A DNA stretch of 64,000 bases from NCBI RefSeq assembly GCF_964213995.1, contig NC_135808.1, positions 40,114,001-40,178,000 of the forward strand, read 5' to 3'. Below are positions 7,001-45,231 of this stretch, one piece after another; position 1 is the first letter of the stretch; each line of letters begins with the position of its first letter. The notes beneath the pieces were generated by a model, which saw only the letters and a list, made by a program, of their open reading frames with translations, was not told the origin of the DNA and did no database searches. This stretch comes from Mustelus asterias. Its lineage: Eukaryota. Both the position numbers and the translations under genes were made by a program.

Positions 7001-7151
7001 CTACTACCCTGATATTATCTTTTATTAACAGAGCTACCCCACCACCTTTTCCTTCCTGTCTATTCTTCCTAAACGCCTGATACCCCTGGATATTCATCTT
7101 CCAGTCCTGGTCTCTCTGCAGCCACGGTTCTGTAGTGGCCACTAGATCATA

Positions 7152-18955: not shown

Positions 18956-19142
18956 TGGAGAAGCTTGCAGATGCAAGAAGCACATCCTAGGAGAAATGAA
19001 GGTGACTCCAACATTGCCTTTTGCACAGGTCCTTGCTTCTATTGCCCCTGTGAACTAGTGTTGAGCTCTCATCTGGATAAGAGCCATCATTGTTGGCTGA
19101 AGCTTACATCTTCAACACCTTGGTGGATGTGTGAACAGCAAC

Positions 19143-21244: not shown

Positions 21245-21296
21245 ATGTTGCGGATCCTTTTCTCCATCTCCTTGTGTTTTTCCTGCGTCTCTTCCG
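21245..21296 (+). CDS. MHC class I-like heavy chain exon 1 (signal peptide MLRILFSISLCFSCVSS)
   Basis: Hydrophobic 17-aa leader ending at a phase-1 G|GTAAGG donor. Confidence 0.85.
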
Positions 21297-21654
21297 GTAA
21301 GGACAGAATTCAGCCTTTCGTTCTCTCTCTGTCACTGCTACATCTCAGGATCTTTGCAGTAAATTCCCTGAGATTTTACGAGGAGTAACAATGCGTGTCA
21401 CAACTGCAATGCGTGTCACAATATTAAACTGATCGAGGTTTTTGTATCTAATTTTCTGTGTCCGTCTCGCTCTGTTCCTCTATCTATTTCTCTCTGTTGC
21501 TTTCTTTCTCTCTCTCTCTCACTCTTCCCCTTTCCTTCTTATTGTCTCTGTGTTTTTCTGTTTCTCTCTGGGGCTTGTGAATGAACTTCACCTGGTCAGG
21601 TGGTGGTGTTTGTAGATGTATATGAACTTGTCTCTTTCATTGTTTTCCATACAG

Positions 21655-21915
21655 ACAGTAATTCCATTACCACGGTGTTTGTGGCAACATCTGGCATTAC
21701 TGAGTTACCTGAGTATTTTGGTGTAAGTATGATCAATGGAGTTCCAGTGACATCTTACGACAGTGATACCCACCAGACAGTCTCCCGGCAGCAGTGGATG
21801 GCAGACTCTTTTGATGGGGAGTACTGGGAATATCTCACAAACCAAGGGAATAAACTTTCTGCCATGGCTAAGGAAAATCTGAGGACAATAATGAAGGGGA
21901 CAAACCAGACATCCG
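21655..21915 (+). CDS. MHC class I-like exon 2 (alpha1 domain)
   Basis: CAG acceptor, 261 nt, DSNSITTVF...PEY..V.MING....YDS...SRQQWM....GEYWE...NQT, G|GTAAG donor, phase 1-1. Confidence 0.95.
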
Positions 21916-22149
21916 GTAAGATTAGTGGCTCTGGATCTCTCATTAACTGCCTGTTTAGCTGATACCAGACATCTACCTAACCACAGTTTTACTGCAGTGT
22001 GTAACACTGTGGTGTACAGTGCTTGGATCATCCTAGCCACATCTGTCATATATGTATAAAACAGGTGCCCACGCACCCAATATGGTGGACAGGCTAATTA
22101 CAAACCAGAAGTGTGGCAACAATGAATCATAGATTGATTGCAACAGAGA

Positions 22150-24450
22150 AGGAAGTCATTCAGCCTGTTGTGTCTGAATCAGCTCGAAGCAAGAACAACT
22201 CTGCTAATTCGCACTCCCTTACCCTTTTGACGTTGTCATGTTGGCCTTTCCTGTTAAGTTAATGATCTGAATTCCTTTTGAAAGCTTTGAATGTATTAGC
22301 CTCCAATATACCCTCAGGAAAACTCAAACCATACACTTCGTAACAAAGTTTTTAAAAAGAAAGATTTGGCACATCAATAGGGATGTTCATGACCACCAGA
22401 TGTTTCAAAGCACGTTACAGCTAATGATGTACTTTTGAAGTGCAGGAAATAAGACAGCCATTGCTGGAATTACTGGCACAGACAACAATGTGATCATGAC
22501 AGATAATCTGTTCATAGATATTGATTCAGGGTTAAATTATGGCCAGGATATTTGGGCTAATTCCCCTGCTCTACTTCAAAATACTGCCATCAGATTTTTA
22601 CATCCACCAGAGTAGGCAGATGAGGACTGGCTTAACATTTCATCCAAAAGAGGTATCTCCAGCAGTGCAGCACACTCTCAGTGCTGGAGTGTCAGCCTGG
22701 ATTTTTGAGCTCAAGCCCCAGAGGGAACTTGAATTCAAAACTTTGTGATTGAAATACAATCAATCTAGCCATGGCTGGCCCAGATTTTTCCTTGTGTTGC
22801 TATTGGTTGCTTTGCCTTAAAATTGGTGTTGGCTGGTCCTCCACCCTTCCACCAATGGAAACACTTTCTCCTTGTGTCTAGACCCCCTCTAGATTTTGTA
22901 CATCTTTATCAAAGCTCAACCTCCTTTTCTCTCATTCTTTTGTGAGGAGGATAAGCCTAATTCACAGAATAATAGAATTGTTCCAGTGCAGAAGGAGATT
23001 ATTTGGCCCATTGTGTAACACCGTCTCTCTAAAGGAGACTCATGACTTAGTGCCATCCCCTGTACCCCTGGACGTTCTTTTTATTCAGATAATCATCTAA
23101 TGCCGCCTTAAATGCCTCAATTGAATCATATCTCCACAACACTTCCAGGCAGTGCATTCCAGACTCCAACCACTTGTTGTATGAAATAGTTTGCTTCTTT
23201 GAAAATCACCTTAAGTCTGTGTACTCTCCTTCTTGACCCTTTTACAAGGGGGAACGGTTTCTCCCTATCTGCTCTGTCCAGCCCCCTCATGGTTTGAATA
23301 TCTCTATCAACTCTCTCTTAGTTTTCTTCTCTCCAAGAAGAACAGTCCCAACCTCTCCAATCTGTCCTCATAACTGAAGTTTCTCATCCCTGGAACCATT
23401 CTTGTAAACCTCTTTTGGAGTCTCCAATGTTTTCACATCATTCCTATAGTATGGCATCCAGAACACAATATTCCAGCTGAGGTGTAACTAATGTCTTGTG
23501 TAAGTTAAGCATAACCCTCTTATTCTTGTACTTCTTGTACTGTATGCTTCTATTAATAAGGCCCAGAATACTGTATATTTTATTAACTGCTCTCATGACT
23601 TATCCTGTCACCTTCAATGATCAATGCATATATATACACCCAGGTCCAATTATTCCATGTGACTGAAAGGAGTATTCTGTAAACATTTTCTGCACCCTCT
23701 CTAATATCTTCACATCTTTCCTAAGATGTGTACCCAGAATTAAACACAGTACTCCAGTTGAGTCTGAATTAGTTATTTTGTAAAGGTTTATCTTTATATT
23801 GCATTGGCACACTATGGCTGGAATTCTTCAGCCGCTCTTACCAGGGGGATCATCTGGTCCTGCCGATGATGAAACCCTGCAGTGGGTTTCCCAATGATGG
23901 GGGTACGTAGAACAGAAAACCCCTTTGCCAGCGGAGGGACCAGAAGATCCTGCTACCAGTCAATGGCGGGCAGCCTCTACCACAGTGAAACATGCTATGT
24001 GGGACGTGGAAAATTGTGTCCTATATCTCGATTTATAAACCCCAGGATCTGAAATGCCTTTTTAACCGGTTTCTCATCCTGACATATCAGCCGAAATGAT
24101 TTTACTCAGATACCCCAGCAATACAGTGGAGTTCCTGGGGTCCTTAGATCATTAATTTTCCTGATATATATTAATGACCTAGGCTTGGGTGCACATGGAA
24201 AACATTTCAAAGTTTGCAGATGACACAAAACTTGGGAGTATTGTGAACAGTGAGGAGGTTCAAGATAGACTTCAAAAGGATAAAGACCAAGGGCCAATGG
24301 AATGGGTGGGCAAATAGCAGATTAAATTTAATGAAGAAAATGTGAGCTGATACATTTTTGGAGAATGAACAACAATATAAAATGAAATGTACAATTATAA
24401 AGAGGGTGCAGGAGCAGAGGAATCTGAGGACCATGTGCAAATGCATCTGT
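22150..24450. mobile_element. Cluster of old CR1-type fragments in MHC intron 2
   Basis: Minus-strand CR1 3' fragments (~22960-23800) and a plus-strand RT remnant with KFADD (~24120-24440). Confidence 0.65.
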
Positions 24451-25714
24451 TGAAGGAGCAGAGGAACCTGGGGACCATGTGTTGATGACAGTACTGGTAG
24501 GTGTGATTATAGTATGATCCTTGTGGAAACCAAGACTGGTATTCATGCTAAGGATATCTTCCACTGTGCTTTATAGTACAACCATTGTGCCAAATGGGAA
24601 AGATCCATGAGGTGCTATGGGCCACCAGCAGTAGAATTGTACTCAATGACAATCTGTAATTTAATGGCCTGGCATAACCCCAGGCTACCAATACCATCAA
24701 GTCATTACTGTAATGGGGAGGCAGTAGTGCAGTACGATTGTCACTCAACTAGTAATGCAGAGACCCAGGGCAATGCTCTGGGGATCCGGATTTGAATCCC
24801 ACCAGGGCAGATGATAAATTTTCTTTAAAAACTCGATAGTACATCATCAACCATTCTCGATTGTCGTAAAATACCACTGGTTCACAAATGTCCTTTAGGG
24901 AAGGAAATCTGCCATCCTTATCTGGTTTGGCCTCGTTGTAATTCCAGACTCACAGCAATGTTGTTAATATTATATAGCCTAGTAAACCTCCTTACTGACA
25001 TTTGGGGGCTACTGCCAAAATTTGAAGACTTGTCCTATAGACCAGTGAAGCAACAGCCTGACAGTCACAGAGTCACACCTTACACACAACCATGACCATT
25101 CCTGGATATGTCCTGTCCCACCAGCAGGACAAATCCAGCAGAGCTGGTGGTGGCACAGTGGTATACAGTCAGGAGGGGTTACCCTGTGAGTCCTCAACAT
25201 TGACTCTGGACCCCATGAAGTCTCATGTTACCAGGTCAAATATGGGCAAGGAGGTGGGGTCAAGTGAGGTAAGTGCGCGAGAGGCTGCATATTTGCAAGT
25301 GCTGGTACACTCATCTTTTAAACCTTTTGTTTTATCCTGATTTCAACACACAATTATTTGATCCTGATGTGTATAATCTGTGCTATGTTCTTGAAAGATC
25401 CTGGCTAAATTTTGGCAATGGGGAGCCAAGTTAAGTCTAGGCATTCCTTGTTTGATTGAGGTAGTAGGAGACAACCAGTGTGGGCTCAGTTTGCAGTGCA
25501 GTTTTGCTGGTGACTGTGTCTGCACTTCAGCAATGCCTTTGGTGACGAGATGATCGCTGCCATTCTGAGGGAATTTGTGGACAATGGTCTAGGCTCCACG
25601 ACAGATTGTTGGTGCTCACGTTGATGAACTGTGAGATATCCAAAAGAGAATGGAGGAAGTGGAGAAGAGAATCTTGTCAGTTGAGAAGGTAGTTTCCTCG
25701 GTGGAGTTTATCTT

Positions 25715-26015
25715 AAAGTTTACTTATTAGTGTCACAAGTAGGCTTACATTGACATCGCAATGAAGTTACTGTGAAAATTCCCTGGTCGCCACACTCTGG
25801 CACCTGTTCGGGTACACTGAGGGAGACTTTAGCACAGCTTATTCACCTAACCTGCAAATCTTTGGACTGTGGGAGGAAACCGGAGCACCCGGAGGAAATC
25901 AACGCAGACACGGGGAGAATGTGCAAACTCCACACAGACAGTGACCCAAGCCAGGAATCGAACCCAGGTCCCTGGCTCTGTGAGACAGCAGTGCTAACCA
26001 CTGTGCCACCGTGCC
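25715..26015 (-). mobile_element. HE1-like SINE (alternative tail)
   Basis: Same head and core as other copies. Confidence 0.85.
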
Positions 26016-26324
26016 ATTATATGTTATTCTGTTGTACTGTGCCAAAAAAATGAGAGTTGTGCGGTATTTACCTATTTTTAATGTGCTGTAATCCTTACTT
26101 TTACACTGAGAGAGTACATTTTTTGTACCCTTCACTTTTTCTATCGATGAGTAATGCTACAGCAGGGTGGCTAGTAGGTGGTTTGGTACAGAGGTGGTTG
26201 GTCTGGCCTGACAAGCCCTCATTGTGGGTGAGGAAAATCCCCATTAGAACTATTACTGTCACATTTTCTTTTGCACTTTTGTTATTTTAGAATTATGGAA
26301 TCATTGCTGGTCTCCAATGAAGGT

Positions 26325-26440
26325 CATGATGTGGAGATGCCGGCGTTGGACTGGGGTAAACACAGTAAGAAGACTAACAACACCAGGTTAAAGTCCAACA
26401 GGTTTATTTGGTAGCAAAAGCCACTCGCAAAAGTAACTGT
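26325..26440 (-). mobile_element. Short Penelope pLTR-only insertion
   Basis: ATGTGGAGATGCCGGCGTTGGACTGGGG... pLTR terminus; 12-bp TSD TCCAATGAAGGT at 26313-26324 and 26441-26452. Confidence 0.85.
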
Positions 26441-28745
26441 TCCAATGAAGGTACAGACAAGTCATGTATCCTGGACAAGACTGGGTTATTTTCTTTCTGT
26501 CATTGGAGTATCTAGAAATGGGGGTACTTTGCTTTGTTCAATGTATAAATAGTGATGTGAGTATCCTTAGCCTGTTGGCCCCTATTCTAATGCATTGCTG
26601 ACCCTAATTTAGTTTGGTTGAGTAAGTTGGGGCAGTAGTAATTGAGCTTATCTGGATCAGGTGGAGGAGTACGTGACCCTCCCATGAGATGTCCCCTTTC
26701 GGGTGCTTCTGGACTACACTCCTTCTGACGATTTGGGCTCCCCTGGGGTGGGGGGGCCGGGGTGGGGTGGTGGTAGTGATGCAATATCCTGTTTCTGATG
26801 AGATTATGCTGTTCGGTTCCTGGTATGCGTTTTGCAATAATGTACACCGTTCAACCATGTCTGGCATCTATTAACTAAGTGCTGTTACATGAGGTGCTAT
26901 TACTGGCTCTGATTTGTTACAGTGATTTGGCTGGGCATGGGTGAAGTCTGTTGTGTTGCAATCTTGGCATGGTGTAAGAATCATTGGCATCTGAACCATT
27001 AGTCTGAGTATTTGCTGGTCTTTTCTGTATGTAAAAGTGGAATAATGATCACTTTATCATGTACTAGGTTTTGGGAATTTCTAAGAGTTCGTGTTAGAGT
27101 TTGTGTTGTTTATAAAAAATGTTAAGATCCTCAATAAAAATATGTTAAAAAACATGGGCAAGGAAACCTCCTACTGATGACCACCCCTCTTTAGCTAATA
27201 AATCAGTTCTCCTTCACTTGGAGGAAGCACTGAGAGTGGCAAGGGGACATAATGTACTCTGGGTGGGTGACTTTAATATGCATCACCAAGAGTGGCTTGG
27301 TAGTACCACCACAGACTGAGCAGGGTGCTAAAGGGCATAACTGATAGACTGGGTCTGCAGCTGGCGATGATGGAACCAACAAAAGGGAAAAACATACTTG
27401 ACCTCAGCCTTGCCAACCTGCCTGCTACAGATGTATGGGTAGGAGTTAAGATCATTCAGTCCCTGTGGAGAAGAAGTCCTGGCTTCACATTGAGTATACT
27501 CTCCATTGGGCTGTGTGGCGCTATCACTAAAAGGGATAAACTTTGAACAGCTCAAAACTGGACATCCGTGAAGTGTTGTGGGCCATCAGCAACTGTACTC
27601 AACCATAATCCATAATCATGGCCCGGCGTATTCCCCGCTCTACCATTACAACCAAGGCAGGGGATCAATTCTGGTCAATGAAGAGTGCAGGAGAGCATTC
27701 CAGGAGCAGCACCAGGCATACCTAAAAATGAGATGCCAACCTGGCGCATCCACAGCTACTTGCATGCCAAACAGCATAAGCAGCAAGTAGTAGACAGATC
27801 CAAGAGATCCCACAATCAATGGATCAGATCTAAGCTCTGCAATCCTGCCACATCCAGTCGCGAATGGTGATGGACAATTAAACAACTCACTGGAGGCTCC
27901 ACAAATATCCTCATCCTCAATGATGAGGAGCACAGCACTTCAGTGCAAAAGATAAGGCTGGAGCATTCGCAATAATCTTCAGCCAGAAGTGCCGAGTGGA
28001 TGATCCATCCCGGCCTTCTGCAGAGGTCTCCAGCATCACAGATATCAGCCTTCAGACAATTCGATTCACTCCACATGATGACAAACAAACCCTAAAGGCA
28101 TTTGATGCTGTAAAAGCTATGGGCCCGGACAACATTCCGGCAATATTATTGAAGACCTGTGCTCCAGAACTTGCCACACCCAAATCTAAGCTGTTCAAAA
28201 TCAGCTTCAGCATTACCCAGCAATGTGGAAAATTGCCCAGCTATGTCCTGTGCACAAGAAACAAGAGAAATCCAACAAAGCAATTATCACCCCATCAGTC
28301 GACTCCTGATCTTCAGTAAAGTAACGGAAGGGGTCATCAACCGTGCTGTCAAGTGGTATTTACTTCCACCAGGGTTACTCAGCTCCTGATCTTATTACAG
28401 CCTTGGTTCAAATATGGACAAAAGAGCTGAACTCCAGAGGTAATATGAGAGTGACTGCCCTTGACATCAAACGACTGAGTATGGCATCAAGGAGCGCTGG
28501 CAAAACTGCAGTCAATGGGAATCGGGGGAAAATCTTCCACTGGTTGGAGTCATATCTGGCACAAAGGAAGATGGTTATGGTGGTTGCAAGTCAATCATCT
28601 CGGTGCCAAAACATCACAGGGTATTGTCCTCAGCCTAACCATCTTCAGCTGCTTCATCAATGACTTTCCTTCCTCCAAAAAGTCAGAAGTGGGAATGTTT
28701 GCTGATGACTGCTCAATGTTCAGTACGATTCATGACTCCTCAGTT

Positions 28746-29348
28746 TGTGATGATACTGTGTCTTTTATATCATGCTTCTTGTAAGGGGTATGTTTAAAAT
28801 CAGCTATATTTTACATAGCACTGATTTGTTTGGGCAACAGGCAGCTCCATTGAGAATGCAGGATAATGACTGATTTTAGCTGACTGTGTTCATCTAAAAG
28901 GAGTTAATGCATTGGCATTTGCTTAGGTTTCCTTTGGGGTTTCAGAGTAGGGTGTTGTTTAGGTTGGCTGACAGAGTCATGTGTTAATGGGGAGAGCTAA
29001 GCTTGCAGGTGAGACGGTGTTTTAAACAGTCAGTTTCTACCTGGTTCTGAAAGAAACAAGAAGTGTCTTTCTATATCTCTCTCTGTCTCTGGAGATTTGC
29101 TGTTTGAGGTTGTCAGAAGACCGATGTCTCTATGTCTCTCTCTCTTCCCCGTCCCCCCCGAATTAATTTGTTATAGTTAAACTGTGTCGTTAAGTAAAGT
29201 TTGTTTTGAAAAATGCTTGCCAGTTTGTCAGTAGAATCACACCTGGAGTGAAACATCATATCACCACACTAATGTCAAAACAGCCAATAGTTGGGGTCCA
29301 GACTAACTTCATAATATATCTTGGGGTTTCTGATCTCATACCCTGACA
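28746..29348 (+). mobile_element. Probable solo LTR
   Basis: TGTGA...TGACA termini; interrupts a LINE coding remnant; imperfect 4-bp TSD (AGTT/AGGT). Confidence 0.5.
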
Positions 29349-29530
29349 AGGTGCTGAAGCAGTTCATGTCCAAATGCAGCAAGATCTAGGCAATATCCCG
29401 GCTTCAGCTGACGAATGACAAATAACATTTGTGTCACGTAAGGGCCAGATAATGACCATCCTCAACAAGAGGGAATCTAACCATCACCCCTTGACAATGA
29501 ATGACATTACCATCACAAATACCACATCAT

Positions 29531-30680
29531 CAGAATGGTTGACGAGGGAAGGGCCGTGGATGTCGTCTATATGGACTTTAGTAAAGCGTTTGACAATGTC
29601 CCTCATGGTAGGTTGGTGCAAAAGGTTGGATCTCATGGGATAAAGGGGGAGGTGGCTAGATGGGTGGAGAACTGGCTTTCCAGCTGGATGCCTGTGACTA
29701 GTGGTGTTCCGCAGGGCCCTGTATTGGGACCTCTGCTGTTTGTGATTTATATAAACGATCTGGAAGAAGGTGTAACTGGGGTGATCAGTAAGTTTGCGGA
29801 CGACACAAAAATGGCTGGACTTGCAGATAGTGAGGAACATTGTCAGAGGCTACAGAAGGATATAGATAGGCTGGAAATTTGGGCTAAGAAATGGCAGATG
29901 GAGTTCAATCCAGATAAATGCGAAGTGATGCATTTTGGTAGAACTAACGTAGGGGGGAGCTATACGATAAATGGCAGAACGCAGAGGGACCTGGGTGTGC
30001 AAGTCCACAGATCCTTGAAGGTGACGTCACAGGTGGAGAAGGTAGTGAATAAGACATATGGCATGCTTGCCTTTATAGGACGGGGCATAGAGTATAAAAG
30101 TTGGGGTCTGATGTTGTAGTTGTATAGAACGTTGGTTCGGCCGCATTTGGAATACTGCACCCAGTTCTGGTCGCCACACTACCAGAAGGACGTGGAGGCT
30201 TTAGAGAGAGTGCAGAGGAGGTTTACCAGGATGTTGCCTGGTATGGAAGGGCTTAGTTATGAGGAGATTGGGTAAACTGGGGTTGTTCTCACTGGAAAGA
30301 CCAAGGATGAGGGGTGGCCTGATAGAGGTGTATAAAATTATGAAAGGCATAGATAGGGTGAACAGTGGGAAGCTTTTTCCCAGGTCGGTGGTGACCTTCA
30401 CGAGGGGTCATAGGTTCAAGGTGAGGGGGGGGGGGGGGGGGGGAGGTTTAACACGTATATCAGAAGGACGTATTTTACACAGAGGGTGGTGGGGGCCTGG
30501 AATGCGCTGCCAGGCAAGGTGGTGGAGGTGGACACACTGGGAACGTTTAAGACTTACCTAGATAGCCACATGAAAGGAGTGGGAATGGAGGGATACAAAA
30601 GAATGGTCTAGTTTGGAGCAGGGAGCGGCACGGGCTTGGAGGGCTGAAGGGCCTGTTCCTGTGCTGTATTGTTCTTTGTA
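29531..30680 (+). mobile_element. CR1-type LINE 3' half
   Basis: ORF 29535-30119 with MDFSKAFD, GVPQG, KFADD; CR1 tail. Confidence 0.95.
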
Positions 30681-31119
30681 TCGAGGACAAAGCAGCCACT
30701 TGATTGCTATTCCTTCCATAAACCTTCCTTCCGTCCATCACCAATGAACAGTAGCAGCTGTGTGTACTGTCTACAAGATGAACTGCAGGAATTCATCAAG
30801 ATTCCTCAGGGAACACCTTCCAAACCCATGACCACTACATCCAGAATGGCAAGGGCAGCAGATACCTGGGAACAACTACCTGGAGGTTCCGCTCCAAGTT
30901 ACTCACCATCCTAACTTGGAAACACATTGCGTTTCTTCACTATCACTGGGTTAAATCCTGGAACTCCCACCCGAACACTACTGTGGGTGTACCTATACTT
31001 CCAGGACTACTGCAGCTCAAGGCGGCAGTCCACTACCACCTACTCAAGAGTAACTCGGGATGGGCAATAAATGCTTGCGCAGCCAGTGATGCCCACATTC
31101 CATAAAGTTAAGAAAAAAA

Positions 31120-31310
31120 TTTATTGAACCCATAGAAAGATCTATTATGTAATACAGAACCCACAAAGATTTATTTCTGTAATACTGAGCTCATGGATGG
31201 ATCTATTGTAATTATGTTGCTGCAGTGCATTTTATTCCTGTAATACTGAGCCCAGAAATGTGTCTAATATTGTAATATATGACAATACTGAACCCATTGA
31301 GAAATCCACT
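31120..31310. repeat. Degenerate ~31-bp minisatellite just upstream of the alpha2 exon
   Basis: Repeated GTAATACTGA(A/G)CCCA...ATCTATT units. Confidence 0.7.
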
Positions 31311-31371
31311 AATGAAATAAGGACTCTTTTCCATGAACAGTCTAATCTTTTTCTCTGTTGATCAATGACAG

Positions 31372-31647
31372 GAGTACACATTCTGCAATGGATAAGGAAC
31401 ATTGAGGTCAGTGAAGATGGCTCCATTAAGAGATCGATGAGTGTTGGATTTGATGGAAAGGACTATATTAGTTTAGAATCAGAGAGAATGAGGTGGGTCG
31501 CAACACATCACAATGCAGTGAAGACTAAGGAGAAATGGGATTCTGATGAATCCTGGAACACGTTTTGGAAATGGTTGATGGAAGTAGAACTTGTTGAACG
31601 TTTAAAATCACGTCTATATTTTGGCAAAAAATATCTCAACAGGAAAG
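31372..31647 (+). CDS. MHC class I-like exon 3 (alpha2 domain, no cysteines)
   Basis: 276 nt, GVHILQ...GFDGKDYISL....RWVA....AVKTKEKWD...; AG/GT boundaries, phase 1-1. Confidence 0.95.
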
Positions 31648-31832
31648 GTATTTATTTCAGTTTTAATCCCACATTCTGATCTAACTTCACTGATCAATGA
31701 AACCATTCTATTTTAGTTCATTTACTAATGTCAGAAGTAGTCTTATATTAACACTTCAGTGAAGTTACTGTGAAAATCCCATTCCATTGAGTATCTATTG
31801 TATTGTTTGTGCTTTCACCCTTTCCATTACAG

Positions 31833-32111
31833 TTCAGCCTGATGTCTTCATCTCCAGAAGTGCGCCCATTGGTCTATATAAGCTGTTCACTCTCTCCTGC
31901 CTGGTTACTGGGTTTTATCCTGCAGACATCGAGGTTACTTGGCTAAGGAATGGAGAGGTAATGTCTGAGACACTATCCTCAGGGGTTCGACCGAACCACG
32001 ATGAGACCCATCAGATCCAGAAAGTGATTGAAATTAATGCTGGGGATGAGGATCAATATTCCTGTCAAATTGAACACAGCAGCCTGGCAGAGTCCAAGAT
32101 CCATCAGTGGG
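31833..32111 (+). CDS. MHC class I-like exon 4 (alpha3 C1-set Ig domain)
   Basis: 279 nt, LSCLVTGFYP.DIEVTWLRNG...RPNHD.T.Q...YSCQIEHSSL...W; AG/GT, phase 1-1. Confidence 0.97.
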
Positions 32112-32837
32112 GTAAGCAATGGTACTGGATGTGTCTGTGCATGTGATGGACAAAGAGAGTGTGAAAGAACATGTAATGACAGAGGGGAGACAACGAAACC
32201 CCAAGGCTGTGTATTTTGCACAGTCCAATTTTGAATTGGAGACCAATTTTGAATAGGTTTATAGTGTTATATAGCTGGTCAAGTAAATTTATCAAACAAG
32301 TGGTTAACTTCACACAGTTCTTTCAGCCACATCAAAGTGCAATGTTTTTCAATCCCATTGCCCCAAATCTTCAATTTGGGAAATGGGATTCTTAATACCA
32401 TGCTGACAAATGCACATTTAATATTACAATGGCTTCAATCCTTCATAAAAGCATGCCTGCTTTTATGAAGGATTGAGGTCATTGTCATATTAGCCTGCTA
32501 GGGGACCCAGCAGTTAGAGGACAGGGTATTTTTGATTGGCATCTCTCGCGGTTAATGAGTGTTCTTTCTCTATTTTCAAGCTCAGAGCCTAAAAATCCTA
32601 TTATATTAATGAATTGGTAACAAATAGTTAACAAATCAAATAAATAACTAAGGTTTGAGAGAAATAGCAGTGTGTGCCTTGACTGCAAAACATGGGACTT
32701 AGTGGGTGAAGGGAAAATTTGAAAGCAAAAGAGAGGAGTTGAGGCAATACAGCAGTGTAGCAATTTGGCTAAAGACAAGCAGGGTTGGACAGAAAGTGAC
32801 ATGCAACAGTGTATAGGCTTCATGTGTAGAATAGTAT

Positions 32838-33861
32838 ATGATGTGGAGATGCCGGTGTTGGACTGGGGTAAACACAGTAAGAAGTTTAACAACACCAGGT
32901 TAAAGTCCAACAGGTTTATTTGGTAGCAAAAGCCACACAAGCTTTCGGAGCTCTAATTACGGCATCTCCTCCGGAGCCTTCAACATGTCATTGATGAAGA
33001 CGAACATCTCGCCAAGGCCATCCCCACACCCCCCACTTCTTGCCTTCAAACAACCGCACAACCTCAAACAGACCATTGTCCGCAGCAAACTACCCAGCCT
33101 TCAGGAGAACAGTGACCATGACACCACACAACCCTGCCACAGCAACCCCTGCAAGACGTGCCGGATCATCGACACAGATGCCATCATCTCACGTGAGAAC
33201 ACCATCCACCAGGTACACGGTACATACTCTTGCAATTCGGCCAACGTTGTCTACCTGATACGCTGCAAGAAAGGATGTCCCGAGGCATGGTACATTGGGG
33301 AAACTATGCAGATGCTGCGACAACGGATGAATGAACACCGCTCAACAATCACCAGGCAAGACTGTTCTCTTCCTGTTGGGGAGCACTTCAGCGGTCACGG
33401 GCATTCGGCCTCTGATATTCGGGTAAGCGTTCTCCAAGGCGGCCTTCGCGACACACGACAGCACAGAGTCGCTGAGCAGAAACTGATAGCCAAGTTCCGC
33501 ACACACGAGGACGGCCTCAACCGGGATATTGGGTTCATGTCACGCTATTTGTAACCCCCACAGTTGACTGGACCTGCAGAGTTTCACTGGCTGTCTTGTC
33601 TGGAGACAATACACATCTTTTTAGCCTGTCTTGATGCTCTCTCCACTTACATTGTTTTGTTTCTTAAAGACTTGATTAGTTGGAAGTATTCGCATTCCAA
33701 CCATTATTCATGTAAATTGAGTTTGTGTCTTTATATGCTCTGTTTGTGAACAGAATTCCCACTCACCTGAAGAAGGGGCTTAGAGCTCCGAAAGCTTGTG
33801 TGGCTTTTGCTACCAAATAAACCTGTTGGACTTTAACCTGGTGTTGTTAAACTTCTTACTC
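32838..33861 (+). mobile_element. Penelope-like element (GIY-YIG endonuclease + pLTR, short inverted pLTR)
   Basis: ORF 32985-33554 with CKTC, NVVYLIRC...WYIGET...RMNEHR...GLN; 9-bp TSD GAATAGTAT at 32829-32837 and 33862-33870. Confidence 0.92.
33764..33800 (+). ncRNA. Minimal hammerhead ribozyme motif in Penelope pLTR
   Basis: cac-CTGAAGA-a-GGGGC-ttaga-GCTCC-GAAA-GCTT-gtg. Confidence 0.75.
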
Positions 33862-34609
33862 GAATAGTATGCACAAAACCTTCATAAAAGGATTGAGGAA
33901 CTAGCGAAACAAATCGAGATAAATGGATTTGATATAATCACAATTATTAAAACATGGTTATCAGATGATCAATATCAGGAAATAAATATTGCATGGTACA
34001 CCATATTTTGAAAAACAGGCAGAATGGAAAAGGAGAAGGAGTAGCCCATATAGTAAAGAATAACAGAGACATGTGAAAGAAAGAAAGAAAGAATCTTGGC
34101 TCAGAATTGGAAGTCGTATGGGGGGAGATTAGGAATAGCAAGAATCAGGGAAGAGCCAATTGGAGATGTTTCTGGGCCCCAAACAAAATTTATATAGTTG
34201 GGCAGATCATTATGATAAAATTTGTAGTCCTGTAACTAAAGCAATGTACTAATCATGGAGGACTTCAATCTTCATATGGACTGAACAAAAGGTCGGAACA
34301 AAGTTGATAGAAAAGTTTTGTGGTGAATTCACATGATTGAGACAAACTCAGGACAGCTTTTTTCAGTTCTCTGGTCAACTATGTCAGTAAACACAGTCGA
34401 TGATTTAGTTTCACACAGATTGTATTTAAACGCCAAAATCTGGATGAAAGAATACAGGAATGGTTTTCCTTCCGGCTTTGGTCTTTTGGTCTTTGAGCAT
34501 CCCTCTGTTTTTTTTCCTCATTTTATTTTGTTTTTGTCTCTGGACAGTCATTCTCAATAGGATGTGAAAAACAAAGTGATGGCTGTGATCCAATTAAACT
34601 CTTCCTATC

Positions 34610-36680
34610 AGAACCCGCTACACAAACCCCATCATAACTCCTTACATAACCCCCATTATCACCCCTTACACTACCCTGTCTAACCCTGTTAGAATTTTAA
34701 AAGTTTCTTTGAGATCCCCTCTCAATCTTCTAAATTCCAGTGATCATAATCCTAACCGATTTTGTGTCTCCTCATATGACATCCTAGGAATCAGCCTGGT
34801 AAACCTTCGCTATTCCCTCTGTATAGCAAGGACATCCTTCCTCAGATAACGATTTCAAATTTGCATACAATACTCCAGATGTGGCCTCATCGATGTCCTA
34901 TACAATTGCAGCAAAACATCTCTATTCCTATACTGAAATCCTCTCCCCAATAAGGCCAACATACCATTTGCCCTCTTTACTGCCTGCTGTACCTGCACGC
35001 TTTCTTTCAGTGACTGACGCATGAGGACACCAAGGTCTCACCGAGTATCCACCTCTCAATTTACACACTTTAAAGTAAACATCTGTCTTCCTATTATTGG
35101 CAATCCCATCAATTTCCCCCAAACCATTTCTCTCCTAATGCTGAATTCCATCAGCTCCTCACTAAAACTTGTTTTTCTCAGAAGTTCTGGTACATTATTC
35201 ATGTCTTCTTTTGTGAAGACAGAAGCAAATTCCAAATTTAGTTCCTCAGCCATTTCTTTGTTCCCCATTATCAATTCTCCCATTTCTGACTGTAAGGGGC
35301 CGACATTTGTTTTTGTCAATCTTTTCTCTGTACATATCTATAGAAACTTTTGCAATCAGTTTTCATGTTCGCCGCTATCTTACTTTCATATTCTATTTTA
35401 CCCTTCTTAATTATGACTCCCATCATCGCCCGCTACACAACCGCATAATAATTTCCTACACTATCTGCATCATCACTCCCTAACCCCATCATCACCCTCT
35501 ACACTCCCCCACCATCACACCAAGTCAACCCCCATCATCACCCCCTAAACTACACCCATCATTGCACCATAAACCACTCCTACTATCATACCCTGCACTC
35601 TACGCCATCATTACCCCATCATCACCCCATCCATCATCACCTACACTACTCCCATGATCACAATCTACATCACCCCCTACACTAAGCCCATCATCACCCA
35701 CTTCATCACCCACGACACAACTCACATCATCACCCTCTACACTAACCCCATCTTACCCTCCATACTAAACCCATCATTTCCCATGACATTACCCCCATCA
35801 TCACCGCTGGGCGGCACGGTAGCACAGTGGTTAGCACTGCTGCTTACAGCTCCAGGGACCTGTGTTTGATTCCCGGCTTGGGTCACTGTCTGTGTGGAGT
35901 TTGCACATTCTCCTCATGTCTGCGCGGGTTTCCTCCGGGTGCTCCGGTTTCCTCCCACAGTCCAAAGATGTGCGGGTTAGGTTGATTGGCCATGCTAAAA
36001 TTGCCCCTTAGTGTCCTGAGATGCTTAGGTTAGAGGGATTAGTGGGTAAATATGTAGGGATATGGGGGTAGGGCCTGGGTGGGATTGTGGTGCAGACTCG
36101 ATGGGCCGAATGGCCTCTTTCTGTACTGTAGGGTTTCTATGATTTCTATGATGATTTCTATGAACCACCCCATCGTCACCCACTGTACAAACACCATCTA
36201 CCCCATCAACACCATCTATGCTACCCCCATTGTCACCATCTACACAGCCCATGTCGTCATCCTACACTACCCTCATCATCACCCCCTACATTACCCACAT
36301 TCTCACCCCCTAAACTGCCCGAATCGTCCCCCCCTGTACTACTCCCATCATCGCACCCTATACTTCCCCATCGTTATCCAACACATTATGCTCATCATCA
36401 AACCTACACGACCCTGATCTAATCCCCAACACTACCCCCATCATCTCCCCCTAAACGACTGTTATCGTCACCCTCTACACAACCCCCATCATCTCCCCCT
36501 ACACTTCCTCATCAGCAGCAGCTACATTACCACCATTACCCTCCACACAAGCCCCATCCTCACCCTCTACACAACCCCCATCCTCACCCTCCACACAACC
36601 CCCATCCTCACCCTCCGCCACACTCGGCACTGGCCCCATCCTCGCCCTCGGCACTGGCCCCATCCTCGCCCTCGGCACAG
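34610..36680. repeat. Degenerate C/A-rich ~24-bp minisatellite (CCCCATCATCACCCTCTACACAA-like) with nested CR1 fragments (34690-35410) and a SINE
   Basis: Directly visible repeats. Confidence 0.8.
35808..36162 (+). mobile_element. HE1-type SINE
   Basis: Full head, core and CTATGATT tail. Confidence 0.92.
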
Positions 36681-36764
36681 ACTCTAACGCCAACAATTGG
36701 CATACCAGTCACTGACACTTATAAGATCTCTGTCTAATTACACTGTTTCATGGTACCCTCTGTT

Positions 36765-39700
36765 AACAGTTCACTCCCCCAGCTTTGATTATGCAGCAGT
36801 ACAGCACTGTCTCAGCATTGACCATTTGACAGTGCAGCTCCCCCTCAGCATTGACTCTGCGAAGGTTCAACACTGCATCATCATGGTTTTTCGGCACTGC
36901 AGCACTCACGCAGCACTGACCCTTTGGCATTGCAGCACTGACCGTCCGGCCACCCCTGACACGAGGCCCAACGTCACCTGTGCCACAGACTCTACCGCCA
37001 ACAACCGGCATACCAGATGTTCACACTTACAAAATCTCTGTCTAATTACACTCTTACATGATATCCTCTGTTAACAGTTCACTCCCTCAGCTTTGACTCT
37101 GCAGCAGTACCGCACTGCCCCAGCATTGACCATCCGGCAGTGCAACATTCTGTCCGAATTGACCCTTTAACAGTGCAACAATCCCTCAGAATTGTGCAAC
37201 GGTTCAACACTGCATCATCATGGTTTCTTTGACAGTGCAGCACTCCCACAGCACTGACCCTTTGACAGTGCAGCACACCCTCAGCATTAATGTTCCCATA
37301 GTGCAGCACACCCTCAGCATTAATGTTCCCATAGTGCAGCTCTCCCTCAGCTTTGACCCTCCCACAGTTCAGCGTACCCTCAGCATTGACTCTCCCACAG
37401 TGCAATATACCCTCAGCATTGACCCTTCGAAGCTGCAGCACTCCATCAGCGTTGATCCCCACATAGTGCAGCACTCCCTCAACTTTGACTCTCCCAGTGC
37501 AGCACTCCCTCAGATTTATCCGCCTACAGTGCAGCACTCCTTCAGCATTGACCCTCCCATAGTGCAGCACTCCCTCAGCATTGACCCTCCCACAATGCAG
37601 CGTACCCTCAGTGTTGACCCTCCAACAGTACAGCACTCCCTCAGCACTGACCCTCCCACAGTGCAGCACGCCATCACAATTGATTTTCCACAGTGGAGAA
37701 CAGCCTTAGCATTGACTCTCCCCGACAGTGCAGCACTCACTCAACATTGACCCGCTGACAATGCAACACCCGCTCAAAATTGTGTCTTCGACATTGTAGC
37801 ATGCCCTCAGCATTGACCCGCGGAGAGTGCATCTTTGACTCTGACAGTGCATTCACCGTCCAACAGTGCAGCCGCTCTCAGCATTGACAGTTTAATATTG
37901 CAGCACTCACTCAGCATTAATTCCCAACTTTGCAGCGCTACCTCAGCATTGCCCTTTTGATGCTCCAACAGTGCAGTACACCCTCAGCACTGACCCTTCA
38001 ATGCTGCAGCACACCCTCAGCATTGACCCTTTGATGCTGCAGCACTCCCTCAGCATTGACCCTCCGAAAGTGTGGTCACTCTCAGCACTGACCCTATGAC
38101 AGTGCAGCACTGACCGTCCGTCAGCAGCAATTCTTCAGAATTGACCTTCCCACAGTGCAGCACTCCCAACGCATTGACCGTCCAACAGTGCAGCACGCCA
38201 TCACAATTGATTTTCCATAGTGGAGAACAGCCTTAGCATTGACTCTCCCCAACAGTGCAGCACTCACTCAACATTGACCCGCTGACAATGCAACACCCGC
38301 TCAAAATTGTGTCTTCGACATTGCAGCATGCCCTCAGCATTGACCCGTGGACAGTGCATCTTTGACTCTGACAGTGCATTGACCTTCCGACAGTGCAGCC
38401 CGCTCTCAGCATTGACCCTCCCACAGTGCAGCACTCCCTCAACATTGATGCTCCCACATTGCAGCACTCCCTCAGCATTGACCCACCGACAGTGCAGCAC
38501 GCCCTCAGCATTCACCTTCTGACAATGCAGCACACCCTTAGCATTGATCATCTAACAGTGCAGCACATCCTCAGCATTGACCCTCTAACAGTGCAGCACT
38601 CCATCAGCATTGATGCTCCCACAGTGTGTGGCACTCCCTCAGCATTGAGTCGTAAAATAGATAGAAAGCTGGTCAGCAGATAGGAAGCAAAGAGTTGGCA
38701 TAAATGGGTCTTTTTCCGCATGGCAGTCAGTGACTAGTGGGGATTCGCAAGGATCTGTGCTAGGGCACGAATTGTTCACATTATATATTAATGATTTGGA
38801 AGAGGGAACTACATGTATTATCTCCAAATTTGCAGATGATACAAAGTTGGGTGGGAGGGTGAACTGTGAGAAGGATGCAGAGATGCTTCAGCGTGATTTG
38901 AACAGGCTGACTGTGTGGGCATAAGCATAGCAGATGCAGTATAATGTGGCAGCAATAATAGGGAGACACATTATTACTTGAATGGGTGTAAATTGAGACA
39001 GGTGGATACTCAGCAAGACCTTGGTGTCCTCATGCATCAGTCGCTGAAAGTAAGCAAGTGGGTACAGTAGGCAGTAAAGAAGGCAAATGGTATGTTGGCC
39101 TTCATAGAGATAGATTTGAGTATGGGGATATTTTGCTGCAATTGTATAGAGTGTTGTTGAGGTCACACCTGGAGTATTGTGTGCCGTTTTGGTGTCCTTA
39201 GAAGGATGTCCTTGCTATAGAGGGAGTACAATGAAGGTTTACCAGGCTGATTCCTGGGCTGTCAGGTCTGTTGTATGAGGAGAGACTAAGTTGGTTAGGA
39301 TTATATTCACTGGAGTTTAGAAGAGTGAGAGGGGATCTTACAGAAACTTATAAAATTCTAACAGGGTTAGACAGGTTAGATTCAGAATGTTCTCAAATGG
39401 GGCAATCCAGAACTAGGGGTCATAGTTTGAGGATAAGGGATAAATCTTTTAGAACTGAGGTGAGGAGAAATTTCTTCACCCAGAGGGTGTTGGATGTGTG
39501 GAATTCCCTACCACAGAATGAGATGAGTTCCAAAAGTTATCTGATTTCAAGAAGAAATCTAGGGGCTAAAGGGATCAAGGGATATGGGAGGAAGAGGGAT
39601 CAGGATATAGAATTTGATGATCAGCCATGATCAAAATGAATGGTGGAGCAGGCTCGAAGGGCCGAATGGCCTACTCCTTGCCTCTCGTTTCTATGTTTCT

Positions 39701-39810
39701 ATTGATGCTCCCACAGTCAGCACTCTCTGTGTTGACCCTGCGACAAGTACAGGACTCCCTCAGTATTGAATCTCTAACAGTGCAGCAGTCCCTCAGCATT
39801 GACTCATGTT
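36765..39810. repeat. ~33-bp minisatellite (CAGTGCAGCACTCCCTCAGCATTGACCCTCCCA) interrupted by a CR1
   Basis: Dozens of tandem degenerate units; internal block duplications (~37650-37880 vs ~38180-38420). Confidence 0.92.
38650..39700 (+). mobile_element. Degenerate CR1 3' fragment
   Basis: SG..QGSVLG, KFADD, RRNFFTQRV. Confidence 0.9.
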
Positions 39811-40158
39811 CCTCTGAGTCGCAGTACAGTGGGAGCCTAGATTCTGCACTCAAGGCTGATGCGTGCCTGTAATGTGCTCATTGCTGCCTGTCAATGGATC
39901 CTGTCATCCTCTTCTCAACCTTTTCCTCCAATCTGAGATCCACAATCACTTTTTAACTTGCTGCAAATGCATAATACCTCCCTTAATTTCAGTGAAAATT
40001 GGGTGTTTTCTGTCAGCAGGTATGAAACACATCAGTGACGCTGACTCCTAAACTTTACTTTTAATCTTGGGACAGAGAATAAAGACAAGAGGTAACCAGA
40101 CTATCATAGAACTGCTAATAAACGAAGACAATACTGATATTATTTCAATGTTTTTCAG

Positions 40159-40320
40159 AAATACCAGAAAGTGGTGGGCACTCACAACTTGGAATTATAG
40201 CTGGATCAATAATCAGTGTACTGGCTGCTATATTCGGAATAATTGCAATAGCCATCTGGAAAAGGCCACAGAGAGGGAAAAAAGAATCAGAGAGTGGAGA
40301 ATCTGGATCTGGGGAATCAG
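40159..40320 (+). CDS. MHC class I-like exon 5 (connecting peptide, TM, proximal cytoplasmic tail)
   Basis: TTTTTCAG acceptor; EIPESGGHSQ-LGIIAGSIISVLAAIFGIIAIAIW-KRPQRGKKESESGESGSGES; G|GTGAGG donor; 162 nt, phase 1-1; not in the ORF track. Confidence 0.9.
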
Positions 40321-44879: not shown

Positions 44880-45184
44880 CACAACTGTTTTTGGAGACCG
44901 ACCCGTCTCACCATCATCCAGAAACCATGGATAATAATGTGGAACTGGATCTGAGTGAATCTGACCCTCATCTCACCCTGGAGCCTTTTCCGAGCGGGTT
45001 AAAAAGTTCACATGACCCAGTGGAAGGTAACAAAACCACAACTGAACAAGAACAGAGTTCCTTCCAAACAGACACTTCAACTGACCTAAAATGTAATCTA
45101 GATAACAATATTACAGAACAATTAACCAACTACAAGGAAGGAGAAACAATGCAGAATTTACTAAGACATTATGATCGTCATTGA
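44880..45184 (+). CDS. Candidate terminal cytoplasmic exon of the MHC class I-like gene (~101 aa, acidic)
   Basis: TTTCAG acceptor in compatible phase 1; open for ~101 codons in apparently non-repeat AT-rich sequence (AQLFLETDPSHHHPE...QNLLRHYDRH*). Confidence 0.5.
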
Positions 45185-45231
45185 AAAAGCCCTGGAAATA
45201 ACTAGTCAGAGTAGAAAAACTCTGAATGGCC

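What the first reader, a model, noticed from the sequence alone, without database searches (positions are those of the whole stretch)
21245..40320. Intact non-classical MHC class I gene whose alpha2 domain has lost both disulfide cysteines
Seen: five phase-compatible exons without stops. In alpha2, the canonical HTLQxMYGC reads HILQWIRNI (C101->I) and YLEGTCVEWL reads LMEVELVERL (C164->L), by manual alignment to HLA numbering. The alpha3 Cys pair, the N86 glycan site (NQT) and beta2m-contact residues H93/Q96/D119/G120/D122 are kept. Established: the C101-C164 bond is near-invariant in class I-family molecules. Inference: paired replacement by two aliphatic residues in an otherwise intact gene suggests a compensated structural variant rather than decay. 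It may belong to a described shark non-classical lineage (UEA/UCA-like) or be new; I cannot assign it from sequence alone.
Basis: partly seen in the sequence, partly recalled or inferred. Interest (0 to 1): 0.85.

Follow-up and report, generated by a model that had tools for sequence, protein, structure and literature searches.

The report
Shark class I gene without alpha2 disulfide
This is an intact, transcribed non-classical MHC class I gene of the starry smooth-hound shark, and its missing alpha2 disulfide is not a quirk of this gene but an old trait shared by a whole shark-only gene family, probably the family already described as UEA.

Summary
Five phase-compatible exons (21245-40320, + strand) encode leader, alpha1, alpha2, alpha3 and a transmembrane piece. 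The alpha2 exon has no cysteine: Ile sits in the Cys101 column and Leu in the Cys164 column. The gene runs further than reported, with a sixth exon at 44880. Each of the five exon translations matches, at 100%, an NCBI protein of Mustelus asterias, P0164. Intron-free contigs in 4 of 4 public runs show the alpha2-alpha3 splice, and one shows alpha1-alpha2.

The reading of a paired, compensated change in this gene is only partly right. In 94 related alpha2 segments from 13 shark species, none of the 91 that cover the Cys101 column has Cys there. The Cys164 column varies, and 9 segments still have Cys. The family is one clade with 100/100 support. So Cys101 was lost once, at the base of the family, and Cys164 was replaced many times afterwards.

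The family is multicopy, found only in sharks, on the same chromosome as classical class I genes, and distinct from the UAA/UBA-like and UDA-like clades. That fits the published UEA lineage. I could not read the UEA paper, so I cannot say whether the cysteine loss is already in print. Interest is modest.

The parts
21245..21296 (+). Exon 1: start codon and leader peptide (MLRILFSISLCFSCVSS, plus the first base of a split codon)
   Evidence: It is 100% identical to P0164 residues 1-17. The UDA-like proteins P0254 and P0249 carry a near-identical leader: 14 of the first 16 residues.
21655..21915 (+). Exon 2: alpha1 domain (261 nt), ending with the NQT glycosylation site
   Evidence: Pfam MHC_I, E 1.1e-6. 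100% identical to P0164 residues 19-104. The loose end of an X1 contig before 31371 reads the last 30 bases of this exon, which shows the E2-E3 junction.
31372..31647 (+). Exon 3: alpha2 domain (276 nt) with no cysteine. Ile codon ATT at 31401-31403 is in the Cys101 column. Leu codon CTT at 31590-31592 is in the Cys164 column.
   Evidence: Pfam MHC_I, E 2.3e-13. 100% identical to P0164 residues 106-196.
31833..32111 (+). Exon 4: alpha3 C1-set Ig domain (279 nt) with both Ig cysteines
   Evidence: Pfam C1-set, E 1e-16. The joint from 31647 to 31833 (GT..AG) appears in one contig in each of 4 of 4 runs, with no differing letters in X21 and X22.
40159..40320 (+). Exon 5: connecting peptide, transmembrane helix and start of the cytoplasmic tail
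   Evidence: 100% identical to P0164 residues 291-343. The AlphaFold model has a helix at residues 298-324. In X2, a relative's contig continues past 32111 with letters like the start of this exon.
44880..45026 (+). Exon 6: acidic cytoplasmic tail (P0164 residues 344-392). A GT lies at 45027. If that donor is not used, the frame stays open to the stop at 45182-45184.
   Evidence: tblastn of P0164 gives 100% over residues 343-392 at 44876-45025. The read-through frame 44882-45178 is 59% identical to the C-terminus of the Heterodontus protein P0001. I did not locate the exon that gives the last residue and stop codon of P0164.
31730..31814 (.). Short interspersed repeat inside intron 3. It is not part of the gene product.
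   Evidence: Summed contig depth in the thousands to hundreds of thousands in all 4 runs, with many different flanks.

Best explanation
The locus is a working non-classical MHC class I gene of Mustelus asterias with six or more exons spanning about 24 kb, most of it transposon-filled introns. It belongs to a large shark-only multigene family that is most probably the published UEA lineage.

Shown: the family lost Cys101 at its base (now Val; Ile in this gene). The partner Cys164 was then replaced repeatedly. This gene's sublineage fixed Leu164.

Inferred: the protein is a type I membrane glycoprotein that pairs with beta2-microglobulin. In place of a covalent bond, an aliphatic side chain on the floor strand (Ile/Val101) packs against Leu164 under the alpha2 helix. 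Folding of the platform therefore needs no oxidation step. The groove keeps the residues that hold a peptide's C-terminus (T143, K146, W147) but has lost those that hold its N-terminus (Y7 to T, Y159 to L, Y171 to R) and R84 (to G). It probably binds something other than a standard 8-10-mer peptide, such as a ligand open at one end or a hydrophobic ligand, or it serves as a ligand for an innate-type receptor. A long acidic tail conserved with Heterodontus probably controls trafficking.
For: Gene and product:
- Exon model. Pfam domains. Each of exons 1-5 is 100% identical to NCBI protein P0164 of Mustelus asterias; exon 6.
- The AlphaFold2 model of P0164 built on alignment A1 has pLDDT above 90 across alpha1 and alpha2. 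Its best Foldseek matches are chicken BF2, shark class I 6lup and MR1, all at E about 1e-26 to 1e-29.

Expression:
- The E3-E4 joint with GT..AG ends appears in 4 of 4 runs. X21 and X22 contigs are identical to the window over 198 + 139 letters.
- Depth is zero at 31200-31363, 31651-31691 and 32143-32400. An E2-E3 loose end is present in X1.

Family trait:
- 0 Cys in 91 covered Cys101 positions of 94 family alpha2 segments. The Cys164 column reads L 30, F 24, Y 11, C 9, S 7, G 4, D 3, and W, H, V, T one each.
- Alignment A1 gives the same picture in 56 family rows, against Cys/Cys in 11 of 11 rows of other shark and chimaera lineages.
- The family clade has 100/100 support, and this gene's 14-row sublineage has 99/99 and contains both squalomorph and galeomorph sharks. 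At least 17 changes occurred at column 164 and 2 at column 101.

Constraint on this gene: 9 of 120 conserved columns changed against 49 of 153 variable ones.

UEA label:
- PMC10751288 (section 9 read) describes UEA as multicopy and clustered with single-copy UDA in the MHC.
- PMC12562908 (passages read) says sharks have two expanded class Ib families: UBA, derived from UAA, and the more ancient UEA.
- Here the family has 10 NCBI proteins of M. asterias (9 besides P0164) on a contig of the same length (140,552,254) as the UDA-like and UAA-like proteins. It is sister to the UDA-like clade and separate from the UAA/UBA-like clade.
Against: - No protein or paper seen here carries the name UEA together with a sequence. 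The label rests on elimination and on published descriptions, and the UEA and UDA papers were not held.
- The runs used are not on record as RNA ('RNA?' or '?'). I call them transcripts because introns are uncovered, which is an inference.
- The exact contigs of this gene cover E2 to the middle of E4 only. The E4-E5 and E5-E6 junctions rest on the NCBI model and on relatives' contigs.
- The test can overstate constraint, because the 'majority' residue is a poor ancestor in variable columns.
- Beta2-microglobulin pairing, side-chain packing at positions 101/164, the ligand and the role of the tail are all inferred.
- Column 164 is small or polar (S, G, D, T) in 15 of 94 family segments. So a hydrophobic partner is not needed family-wide, which weakens the 'compensation' idea.
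Confidence: 0.82

Rival explanations
1. The gene is a recent pseudogene or a decaying duplicate, and the two lost cysteines are early signs of loss of function.
For: The gene sits on a longer end branch (0.17) than its same-species relative P0156 (0.022). It differs from the sublineage majority at 58 of 273 columns against 16 for P0156. In the same runs, contigs that differ from the window by a few letters have higher depth figures than the contigs identical to it, although contig depth cannot rank genes.
Against: There are no stops or frame breaks in six exons. Spliced contigs identical to the window occur in two runs and near-identical ones in two other organisms. The cysteines are missing in every family member from 13 species, so their absence long predates this gene. 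Its changes avoid conserved columns. Five other sublineage members are as divergent or more, at 54-69 of 273 columns.
Confidence: 0.04
2. The family is a shark class Ib lineage different from UEA: either unnamed, or the UCA lineage, or a mixture of the two. The family-wide loss of the disulfide would then be an undescribed trait.
For: No named UEA sequence turned up in 28 clusters looked up or among 120 listed hits. All family proteins carry only automatic names. The papers that define UEA and UCA could not be read.
Against: Two open papers say sharks have only two expanded class Ib families, and that UEA is the multicopy one clustered with UDA (PMC10751288 section 9; PMC12562908 passages). 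This family is expanded, and it is sister to the clade holding the nurse shark 'nonclassical MHC class I antigen' QGX07421.1 and a chimaera protein, which I take to be UDA. The UBA-like clade groups with UAA. As I recall the UEA abstract (not seen here), UEA is shark-only and lacks the invariant peptide-end residues. That matches.
Confidence: 0.12
3. The missing cysteines are an artefact of alignment or exon choice, and the true alpha2 exon or reading frame keeps the disulfide.
Against: The HMMER alignment to PDB class I chains has only one single-residue gap, which lies between the two columns. The exon has no Cys in this frame. Spliced contigs use exactly these exon borders. The NCBI protein has the same sequence. 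tblastn finds no other class I exon in the 64 kb window.
Confidence: 0.01

Closest known systems
Shark non-classical class I lineage UEA (Almeida et al. 2021, J Immunol 207:824; the paper was not held, so known here only through PMC10751288, PMC12562908 and my recall of its abstract)
   Same: It is a multicopy family found in sharks only (13 species, both shark superorders, no ray or chimaera member among the hits). It lies on the same chromosome-sized contig as the classical-like and UDA-like genes. It is not derived from UAA. Most invariant peptide-end residues are replaced.
   Different: Nothing tested differs. What is missing is a direct comparison with a named UEA sequence, and knowledge of whether the paper reports the lack of the alpha2 cysteines.
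Shark and chimaera lineage that I take to be UDA (clade of nurse shark QGX07421.1 = P0254, with a Callorhinchus protein)
   Same: It is the sister clade in the tree, 99/97. The leader peptide is almost the same: 14 of the first 16 residues. It shares the class I domain order.
   Different: The UDA-like proteins keep both Cys101 and Cys164 (5 of 5 rows) and Y7, Y159 and Y171. They are 30-32% identical to P0164, and one is present in a chimaera.
Classical class I: shark UAA (Triakis proteins, PDB 6lup) and chicken BF2
   Same: They share the fold (Foldseek E about 1e-27), the exon-domain plan, the N86 glycan site, the alpha3 Ig cysteines, the beta2-microglobulin contact residues, and T143, K146 and W147.
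   Different: There is no alpha2 disulfide. Y7, R84, Y159 and Y171 are replaced. Identity is 29-38%. The gene has a long acidic tail exon.
Sporadic class I-like proteins lacking one alpha2 cysteine (Naja, Pseudonaja, Corythoichthys, Dallia, Sander and others)
   Same: One cysteine of the pair is replaced, often by V or L at column 101 or by F, Y, S or R at column 164.
   Different: These are single proteins, each still keeping the other cysteine where both columns are covered. They are below 40% identity to this gene and form no family. None of the 190 non-family segments lacks both cysteines.

Membership tests
MHC class I heavy chain (Pfam MHC_I + C1-set) | Alpha1 and alpha2 domains match the MHC_I profile, and alpha3 matches C1-set | tested here: met
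   MHC_I at E 1.1e-6 (28.8 bits against a cut-off of 28.3, for the alpha1 exon alone) and 2.3e-13 (alpha2). C1-set at 1e-16.
MHC class I heavy chain (Pfam MHC_I + C1-set) | One exon per domain, all in phase 1, in the order leader, alpha1, alpha2, alpha3, transmembrane, cytoplasmic | tested here: met
   Junctions E2-E3 and E3-E4 are seen in contigs.
MHC class I heavy chain (Pfam MHC_I + C1-set) | Class I fold: an eight-strand platform with two helices, plus an Ig domain | tested here: met
   AlphaFold2 model of P0164. The top 50 Foldseek matches are all class I or MR1 chains.
MHC class I heavy chain (Pfam MHC_I + C1-set) | Cys101-Cys164 disulfide in alpha2 (near-invariant, not strictly defining) | tested here: not met
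   Ile and Leu occupy these columns. This departs from the norm, but the domain still scores as MHC_I.
Classical (peptide-presenting) class I | Conserved residues that bind the peptide ends: Y7, Y59, R/Y84, T143, K146, W147, Y159, Y171 | tested here: not met
   the gene has T7, Y59, G84, T143, K146, W147, L159 and R171. Four of the eight are kept.
Shark UEA lineage | Expanded multicopy family in sharks (PMC10751288; PMC12562908) | tested here: met
   about 100 family proteins from 13 shark species, 10 of them from M. asterias. Notes s1-892861 and s1-891911 point to similar genes 6.5 and 7.4 Mb away; I did not check those.
Shark UEA lineage | Lies in the MHC, in a class Ib cluster that also holds UDA, flanked by brd2/b2m and hsd17b8/rxrb/slc39a7/col11a2 (PMC10751288) | tested here: inconclusive
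   The family, UDA-like and UAA-like proteins of M. asterias all report a contig of 140,552,254 bases. The window holds no flanking gene.
Shark UEA lineage | Older than, and separate from, UAA and the UAA-derived UBA (PMC12562908) | tested here: met
   the family clade has 100/100 support on a stem of 0.76. The UAA/UBA-like rows form a separate clade.
Shark UEA lineage | Groups with named UEA reference sequences | not testable with these tools
   No named UEA protein was returned, and the paper is not held.

The most novel reading that the evidence does not exclude
The whole shark family may be the only known large, long-lived, expressed class I family that does without the alpha2 disulfide, and this may never have been pointed out or studied. 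Cys101 was lost once, more than about 300 million years ago by my estimate from the shark superorder split. Its widowed partner then decayed independently at least 17 times. If so, the family is a natural experiment on whether the class I platform, and its quality control by the ERp57/tapasin loading complex, needs that bond.
Probability: 0.3. Interest if true: 0.55.

Novelty: new member of a known kind. Interest (0 to 1): 0.3.

Why it matters
The Cys101-Cys164 bond is one of the most constant features of class I-type molecules. From my own knowledge, not from a call: mutating it in classical molecules impairs folding and surface expression.

A family of dozens of expressed genes per shark genome that lacks the bond shows that the fold can be kept without it. 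The order of events seen here gives a clear evolutionary sequence: the floor cysteine was lost once, then the helix cysteine was replaced many times.

For this single gene the result is mostly a clarification. It is an ordinary member of that family, already annotated automatically, and not a one-off compensated variant.

Tried and rejected
- I looked for the two J Immunol papers that define UDA and UEA by DOI and PMC id. Neither is held.
- Five paper searches aimed at a printed statement that shark UEA, or any class I lineage, lacks the alpha2 cysteines found none.
- Of the eight papers that cite the UEA paper, I searched the text of three. The word 'cysteine' does not occur in PMC10751288, and 'disulfide'/'disulphide' does not occur in PMC9586880. 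The passages of PMC12562908 on shark class Ib families say nothing about the bond. This does not show that the trait is unpublished.
- I hoped that cluster look-ups would reveal nurse shark proteins named UEA. 28 clusters gave only automatic names.
- I hoped that two fused whale shark gene models would show UDA next to a family member. One (P0270) is two family genes in tandem. The other (P0302) is a UDA-like half joined to a divergent class I half about 30% identical to everything else. Neither gives a link.
From the read table I could classify only the listed differences of one organism-B contig by hand. Three were silent, including the third base of the Leu164 codon, and four changed residues. 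That is too few, and not all differences are listed.
- I did not predict a complex with beta2-microglobulin, because the tool folds single chains, and I could not measure the 101-164 contact because no coordinates are returned.
- I considered and rejected a second class I gene in the window: tblastn of P0164 finds only this gene's exons.
Full report
WHAT IS THERE

Reading the + strand between 21245 and 40320 gives five exons with AG/GT borders, all in phase 1 and free of stops:
- leader, 21245-21296
- alpha1, 21655-21915
- alpha2, 31372-31647
- alpha3, 31833-32111
- connecting peptide plus transmembrane helix, 40159-40320

Pfam places MHC_I on the alpha1 and alpha2 exons (E 1.1e-6 and 2.3e-13) and C1-set on alpha3 (1e-16). 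phmmer of the alpha2 exon against all PDB chains finds 490 sequences at E up to 0.01, and the 60 shown are class I or class I-like chains. It aligns to chicken BF2 with a single one-residue gap between the two columns. Ile (ATT, 31401-31403) stands under Cys101 and Leu (CTT, 31590-31592) under Cys164. Neither the alpha1 nor the alpha2 exon encodes any cysteine. The alpha3 cysteines, the NQT site, and H93, Q96, D119, G120 and D122 are present, and they fall in invariant or nearly invariant columns of alignment A1.

THE GENE IS LONGER THAN REPORTED, AND IT IS ALREADY ANNOTATED

Each of the five exons, translated and compared on its own, matches one database protein at 100% and at consecutive positions (residues 1-17, 19-104, 106-196, 198-289, 291-343). 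That protein is P0164, 393 residues, which NCBI names 'class I histocompatibility antigen, F10 alpha chain-like isoform X2 [Mustelus asterias]'. So the window comes from the starry smooth-hound.

That step was left out. Where a full-length protein was needed I used P0164 by its id.

tblastn of P0164 on the window finds the remaining residues 344-392 at 44880-45026. This is a sixth exon behind a cag acceptor, and no other class I exon lies anywhere in the 64 kb. If the donor at 45027 is not used, the frame stays open to a stop at 45182-45184. That 99-residue acidic tail is 59% identical to the C-terminus of a Heterodontus relative, P0001. I did not locate the exon that supplies the last residue and stop codon of isoform X2.

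Introns 2 and 4 (9.4 and 8 kb) hold reverse-transcriptase fragments, a weak GIY-YIG match and 24- and 33-base tandem arrays.

EXPRESSION

Four runs were laid on 31200-32400.
- In 4 of 4 runs, one contig jumps from 31647 to 31833 with GT..AG ends.
- In X21 and X22 (organism H) that contig is identical to the window over 198 + 139 letters.
- In X1 and X2 (organisms A and B) it differs by a few letters.
- All four runs have zero depth over 31200-31363, 31651-31691 and 32143-32400. They hold the spliced form without the introns.

The runs are not on record as RNA, so 'transcript' is my inference from that pattern.

In X1, a contig that ends at 31371 continues upstream with the last 30 bases of exon 2, which shows the E2-E3 junction. 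Behind 32111, a relative's contig in X2 continues with letters like the start of exon 5. The E4-E5 and E5-E6 junctions of this gene itself rest on the NCBI model.

THE MISSING DISULFIDE IS A FAMILY TRAIT

An exhaustive HMMER search with the alpha2 exon returned 355 proteins at E up to 0.001. A word-indexed search with the relative P0001 (residues 1-290) returned 124 proteins at E up to 1e-20.

About 100 of these proteins are 50-87% identical to P0001. They come from 13 shark species: Mustelus, two Scyliorhinus, Carcharodon, Cetorhinus, Heterodontus, two Chiloscyllium, Hemiscyllium, Stegostoma, Rhincodon, Heptranchias and Pristiophorus. No ray or chimaera protein is among them.

I read the two columns from BLAST alignments to the window's alpha2 exon.
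- Family: 94 segments in 93 proteins, each at least 50% identical over at least 60 residues. Isoforms are included, so these are not 94 genes.
  - Column 101 reads V 84, A 3, I 2, L 2, and is not covered in 3. There is no Cys.
  - Column 164 reads L 30, F 24, Y 11, C 9, S 7, G 4, D 3, and W, H, V, T one each, with one gap and one segment not covered.
- Other class I proteins: 190 segments below 45% identity. Both Cys are present in 153, one column is not covered in 26, one Cys is missing in 11, and none lacks both. One further segment at 45-50% identity has Cys at column 164 and does not cover column 101.

A MAFFT alignment of 67 proteins gives the same picture. In 56 family rows there is no Cys at column 101 (V 54, I 1, L 1). 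In 11 rows of other shark and chimaera lineages, all 11 have both Cys.

The sporadic single losses elsewhere are in snakes (Naja, Pseudonaja), teleosts (Corythoichthys, Dallia, Sander, Prochilodus), a sequence filed under Acipenser and flagged as a possible contaminant, and two proteins I did not name, P0011 and P0133.

TREE

A careful IQ-TREE run on 67 ectodomains puts the family in one clade (100/100, stem 0.76). It is sister (99/97) to a clade that holds the nurse shark 'nonclassical MHC class I antigen' QGX07421.1 and a Callorhinchus protein. It is apart from a clade of Triakis classical class I plus multicopy relatives.

The window's gene lies in a 14-row sublineage (99/99) with one or two genes per species, drawn from both shark superorders. 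In this sublineage column 164 is Leu in 13 of 14 rows.

The earliest family branch (P0203, P0213) still has Cys164. Within the family the tree needs at least 17 changes at column 164 and 2 at column 101.

Most replacements (F, Y, S, G, W) are one base away from a Cys codon, and the window's CTT is one base from TTT (Phe). This is my reading of the genetic code, and only the window's codon was seen.

The simplest history is this: Cys101 became Val once at the family's base, and the unpaired Cys164 was then replaced many times. The 'paired, compensated replacement' is therefore not an event of this gene. Column 164 being small or polar in 15 of 94 segments also argues that a hydrophobic partner is not required family-wide.

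IS THIS COPY UNDER CONSTRAINT?

At protein level the gene differs from the majority of its sublineage at 58 of 273 ectodomain columns. Only 9 of the 120 columns conserved at 90% or more in the family are hit, against 49 of the 153 others (Fisher p = 5e-7). Variable columns inflate the second figure, so this is supportive rather than decisive.

The gene's end branch (0.17) is longer than that of its same-species relative P0156 (0.022). Five other members of the sublineage are as divergent or more (54-69 of 273).

The AlphaFold2 model of P0164 has pLDDT above 90 through alpha1 and alpha2 and a helix at residues 298-324. It matches class I chains at Foldseek E about 1e-27. This shows the fold is expected. 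It does not show that the protein is stable without the bond.

GROOVE

Against a Triakis classical sequence, the gene keeps Y59, T143, K146, W147 and N86. It has T at position 7, G at 84, L at 159 and R at 171. Y7 is lost in all 56 family rows. R171 is typical of this sublineage (13 of 14), while Y171 is kept in 37 of the other 42 family rows.

WHICH FAMILY?

Open papers say the following.
- Elasmobranch class Ib genes lie in the MHC, with a large cluster holding single-copy UDA and multicopy UEA, and a separate UBA cluster (PMC10751288, section 9 read).
- Sharks have two expanded families: UBA, derived from UAA, and the more ancient UEA. UDA, UFA and UGA are single-copy (PMC12562908, passages read).

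The family here is expanded. It is on a contig of the same length as the UDA-like and UAA-like proteins of M. asterias. It is sister to the UDA-like clade, with which it shares the leader peptide, and it is not the UAA-related multicopy clade.

By elimination it is UEA. My recall of the UEA abstract (shark-only, invariant residues lost, three sublineages) fits. I put this at about 0.8-0.85. No named UEA sequence was seen, and the defining paper was not held.

Five searches for a printed statement on the missing cysteines found nothing, but the one paper most likely to state it could not be read.

VERDICT

It is a regular member of a large, old, shark-only class Ib family in which the alpha2 disulfide was abandoned at the outset. 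It is not a singular compensated variant. Earlier notes s1-892861 and s1-891911 report similar genes 7.4 and 6.5 Mb away in the same genome, so the scan has met this family before. Interest is modest for this gene. The family-level pattern would deserve more attention if it turns out not to be in print.

Noticed in passing
window 31730-31814 (intron 3): A short element with summed contig depth up to about 278,000 in the transcript-like runs of four organisms, with many different flanks. It is probably an abundant SINE-like repeat that is transcribed as part of many RNAs.
   Followed up: no
window 36261-36613 and 37232-38648 (intron 4): Degenerate tandem arrays of 24-base units (15 copies) and 33-base units (26 and 15 copies) at 65-72% match. 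They create long false ORFs on both strands.
   Followed up: partly
window 45226-47687 (+), directly behind the gene's last exon: Two abutting ORFs of 472 and 348 residues carry endonuclease and reverse-transcriptase matches. This is a nearly whole LINE-type element starting about 40 bases after the read-through stop codon. Similar fragments lie at 4797-7142 (-), 18018-18983 (-), 29535-30119 (+), 42862-43554 (-) and 57110-59779 (-).
   Followed up: partly
window 32985-33554 (+), intron 4: A 189-residue ORF has a weak GIY-YIG match (E 3.6e-4, below the cut-off). As I recall, Penelope-like elements carry this kind of endonuclease domain.
   Followed up: partly
window 44880-45184: There are two possible tail forms. 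The NCBI isoform uses the donor at 45027. Reading through gives 52 more residues ending ...LLRHYDRH, which are conserved with Heterodontus P0001. P0001 itself joins alpha3 directly to this tail with no transmembrane exon, which keeps the frame and would give a soluble form.
   Followed up: partly
database proteins P0254 and P0249 (UDA-like) against window 21245-21295: The leader peptide of the UDA-like lineage matches the family's leader at 14 of the first 16 residues, although the mature proteins are only about 31% identical. This suggests a shared first exon or promoter region, or exchange between neighbouring genes.
   Followed up: no
database protein P0302 (Rhincodon typus, 813 aa): This fused gene model has a first half that is UDA-like (91% to P0254). 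Its second half is a class I-like protein only about 30% identical to the UDA-like, UAA and family proteins. It may be one of the single-copy lineages (UFA or UGA) lying next to UDA.
   Followed up: no
database proteins P0070, P0125, P0092, P0135, P0028, P0002, P0004: Class I-like proteins of snakes, several teleosts and a sequence filed under a sturgeon lack one of the two alpha2 cysteines. They may be isolated cases of the first step seen in the shark family.
   Followed up: partly
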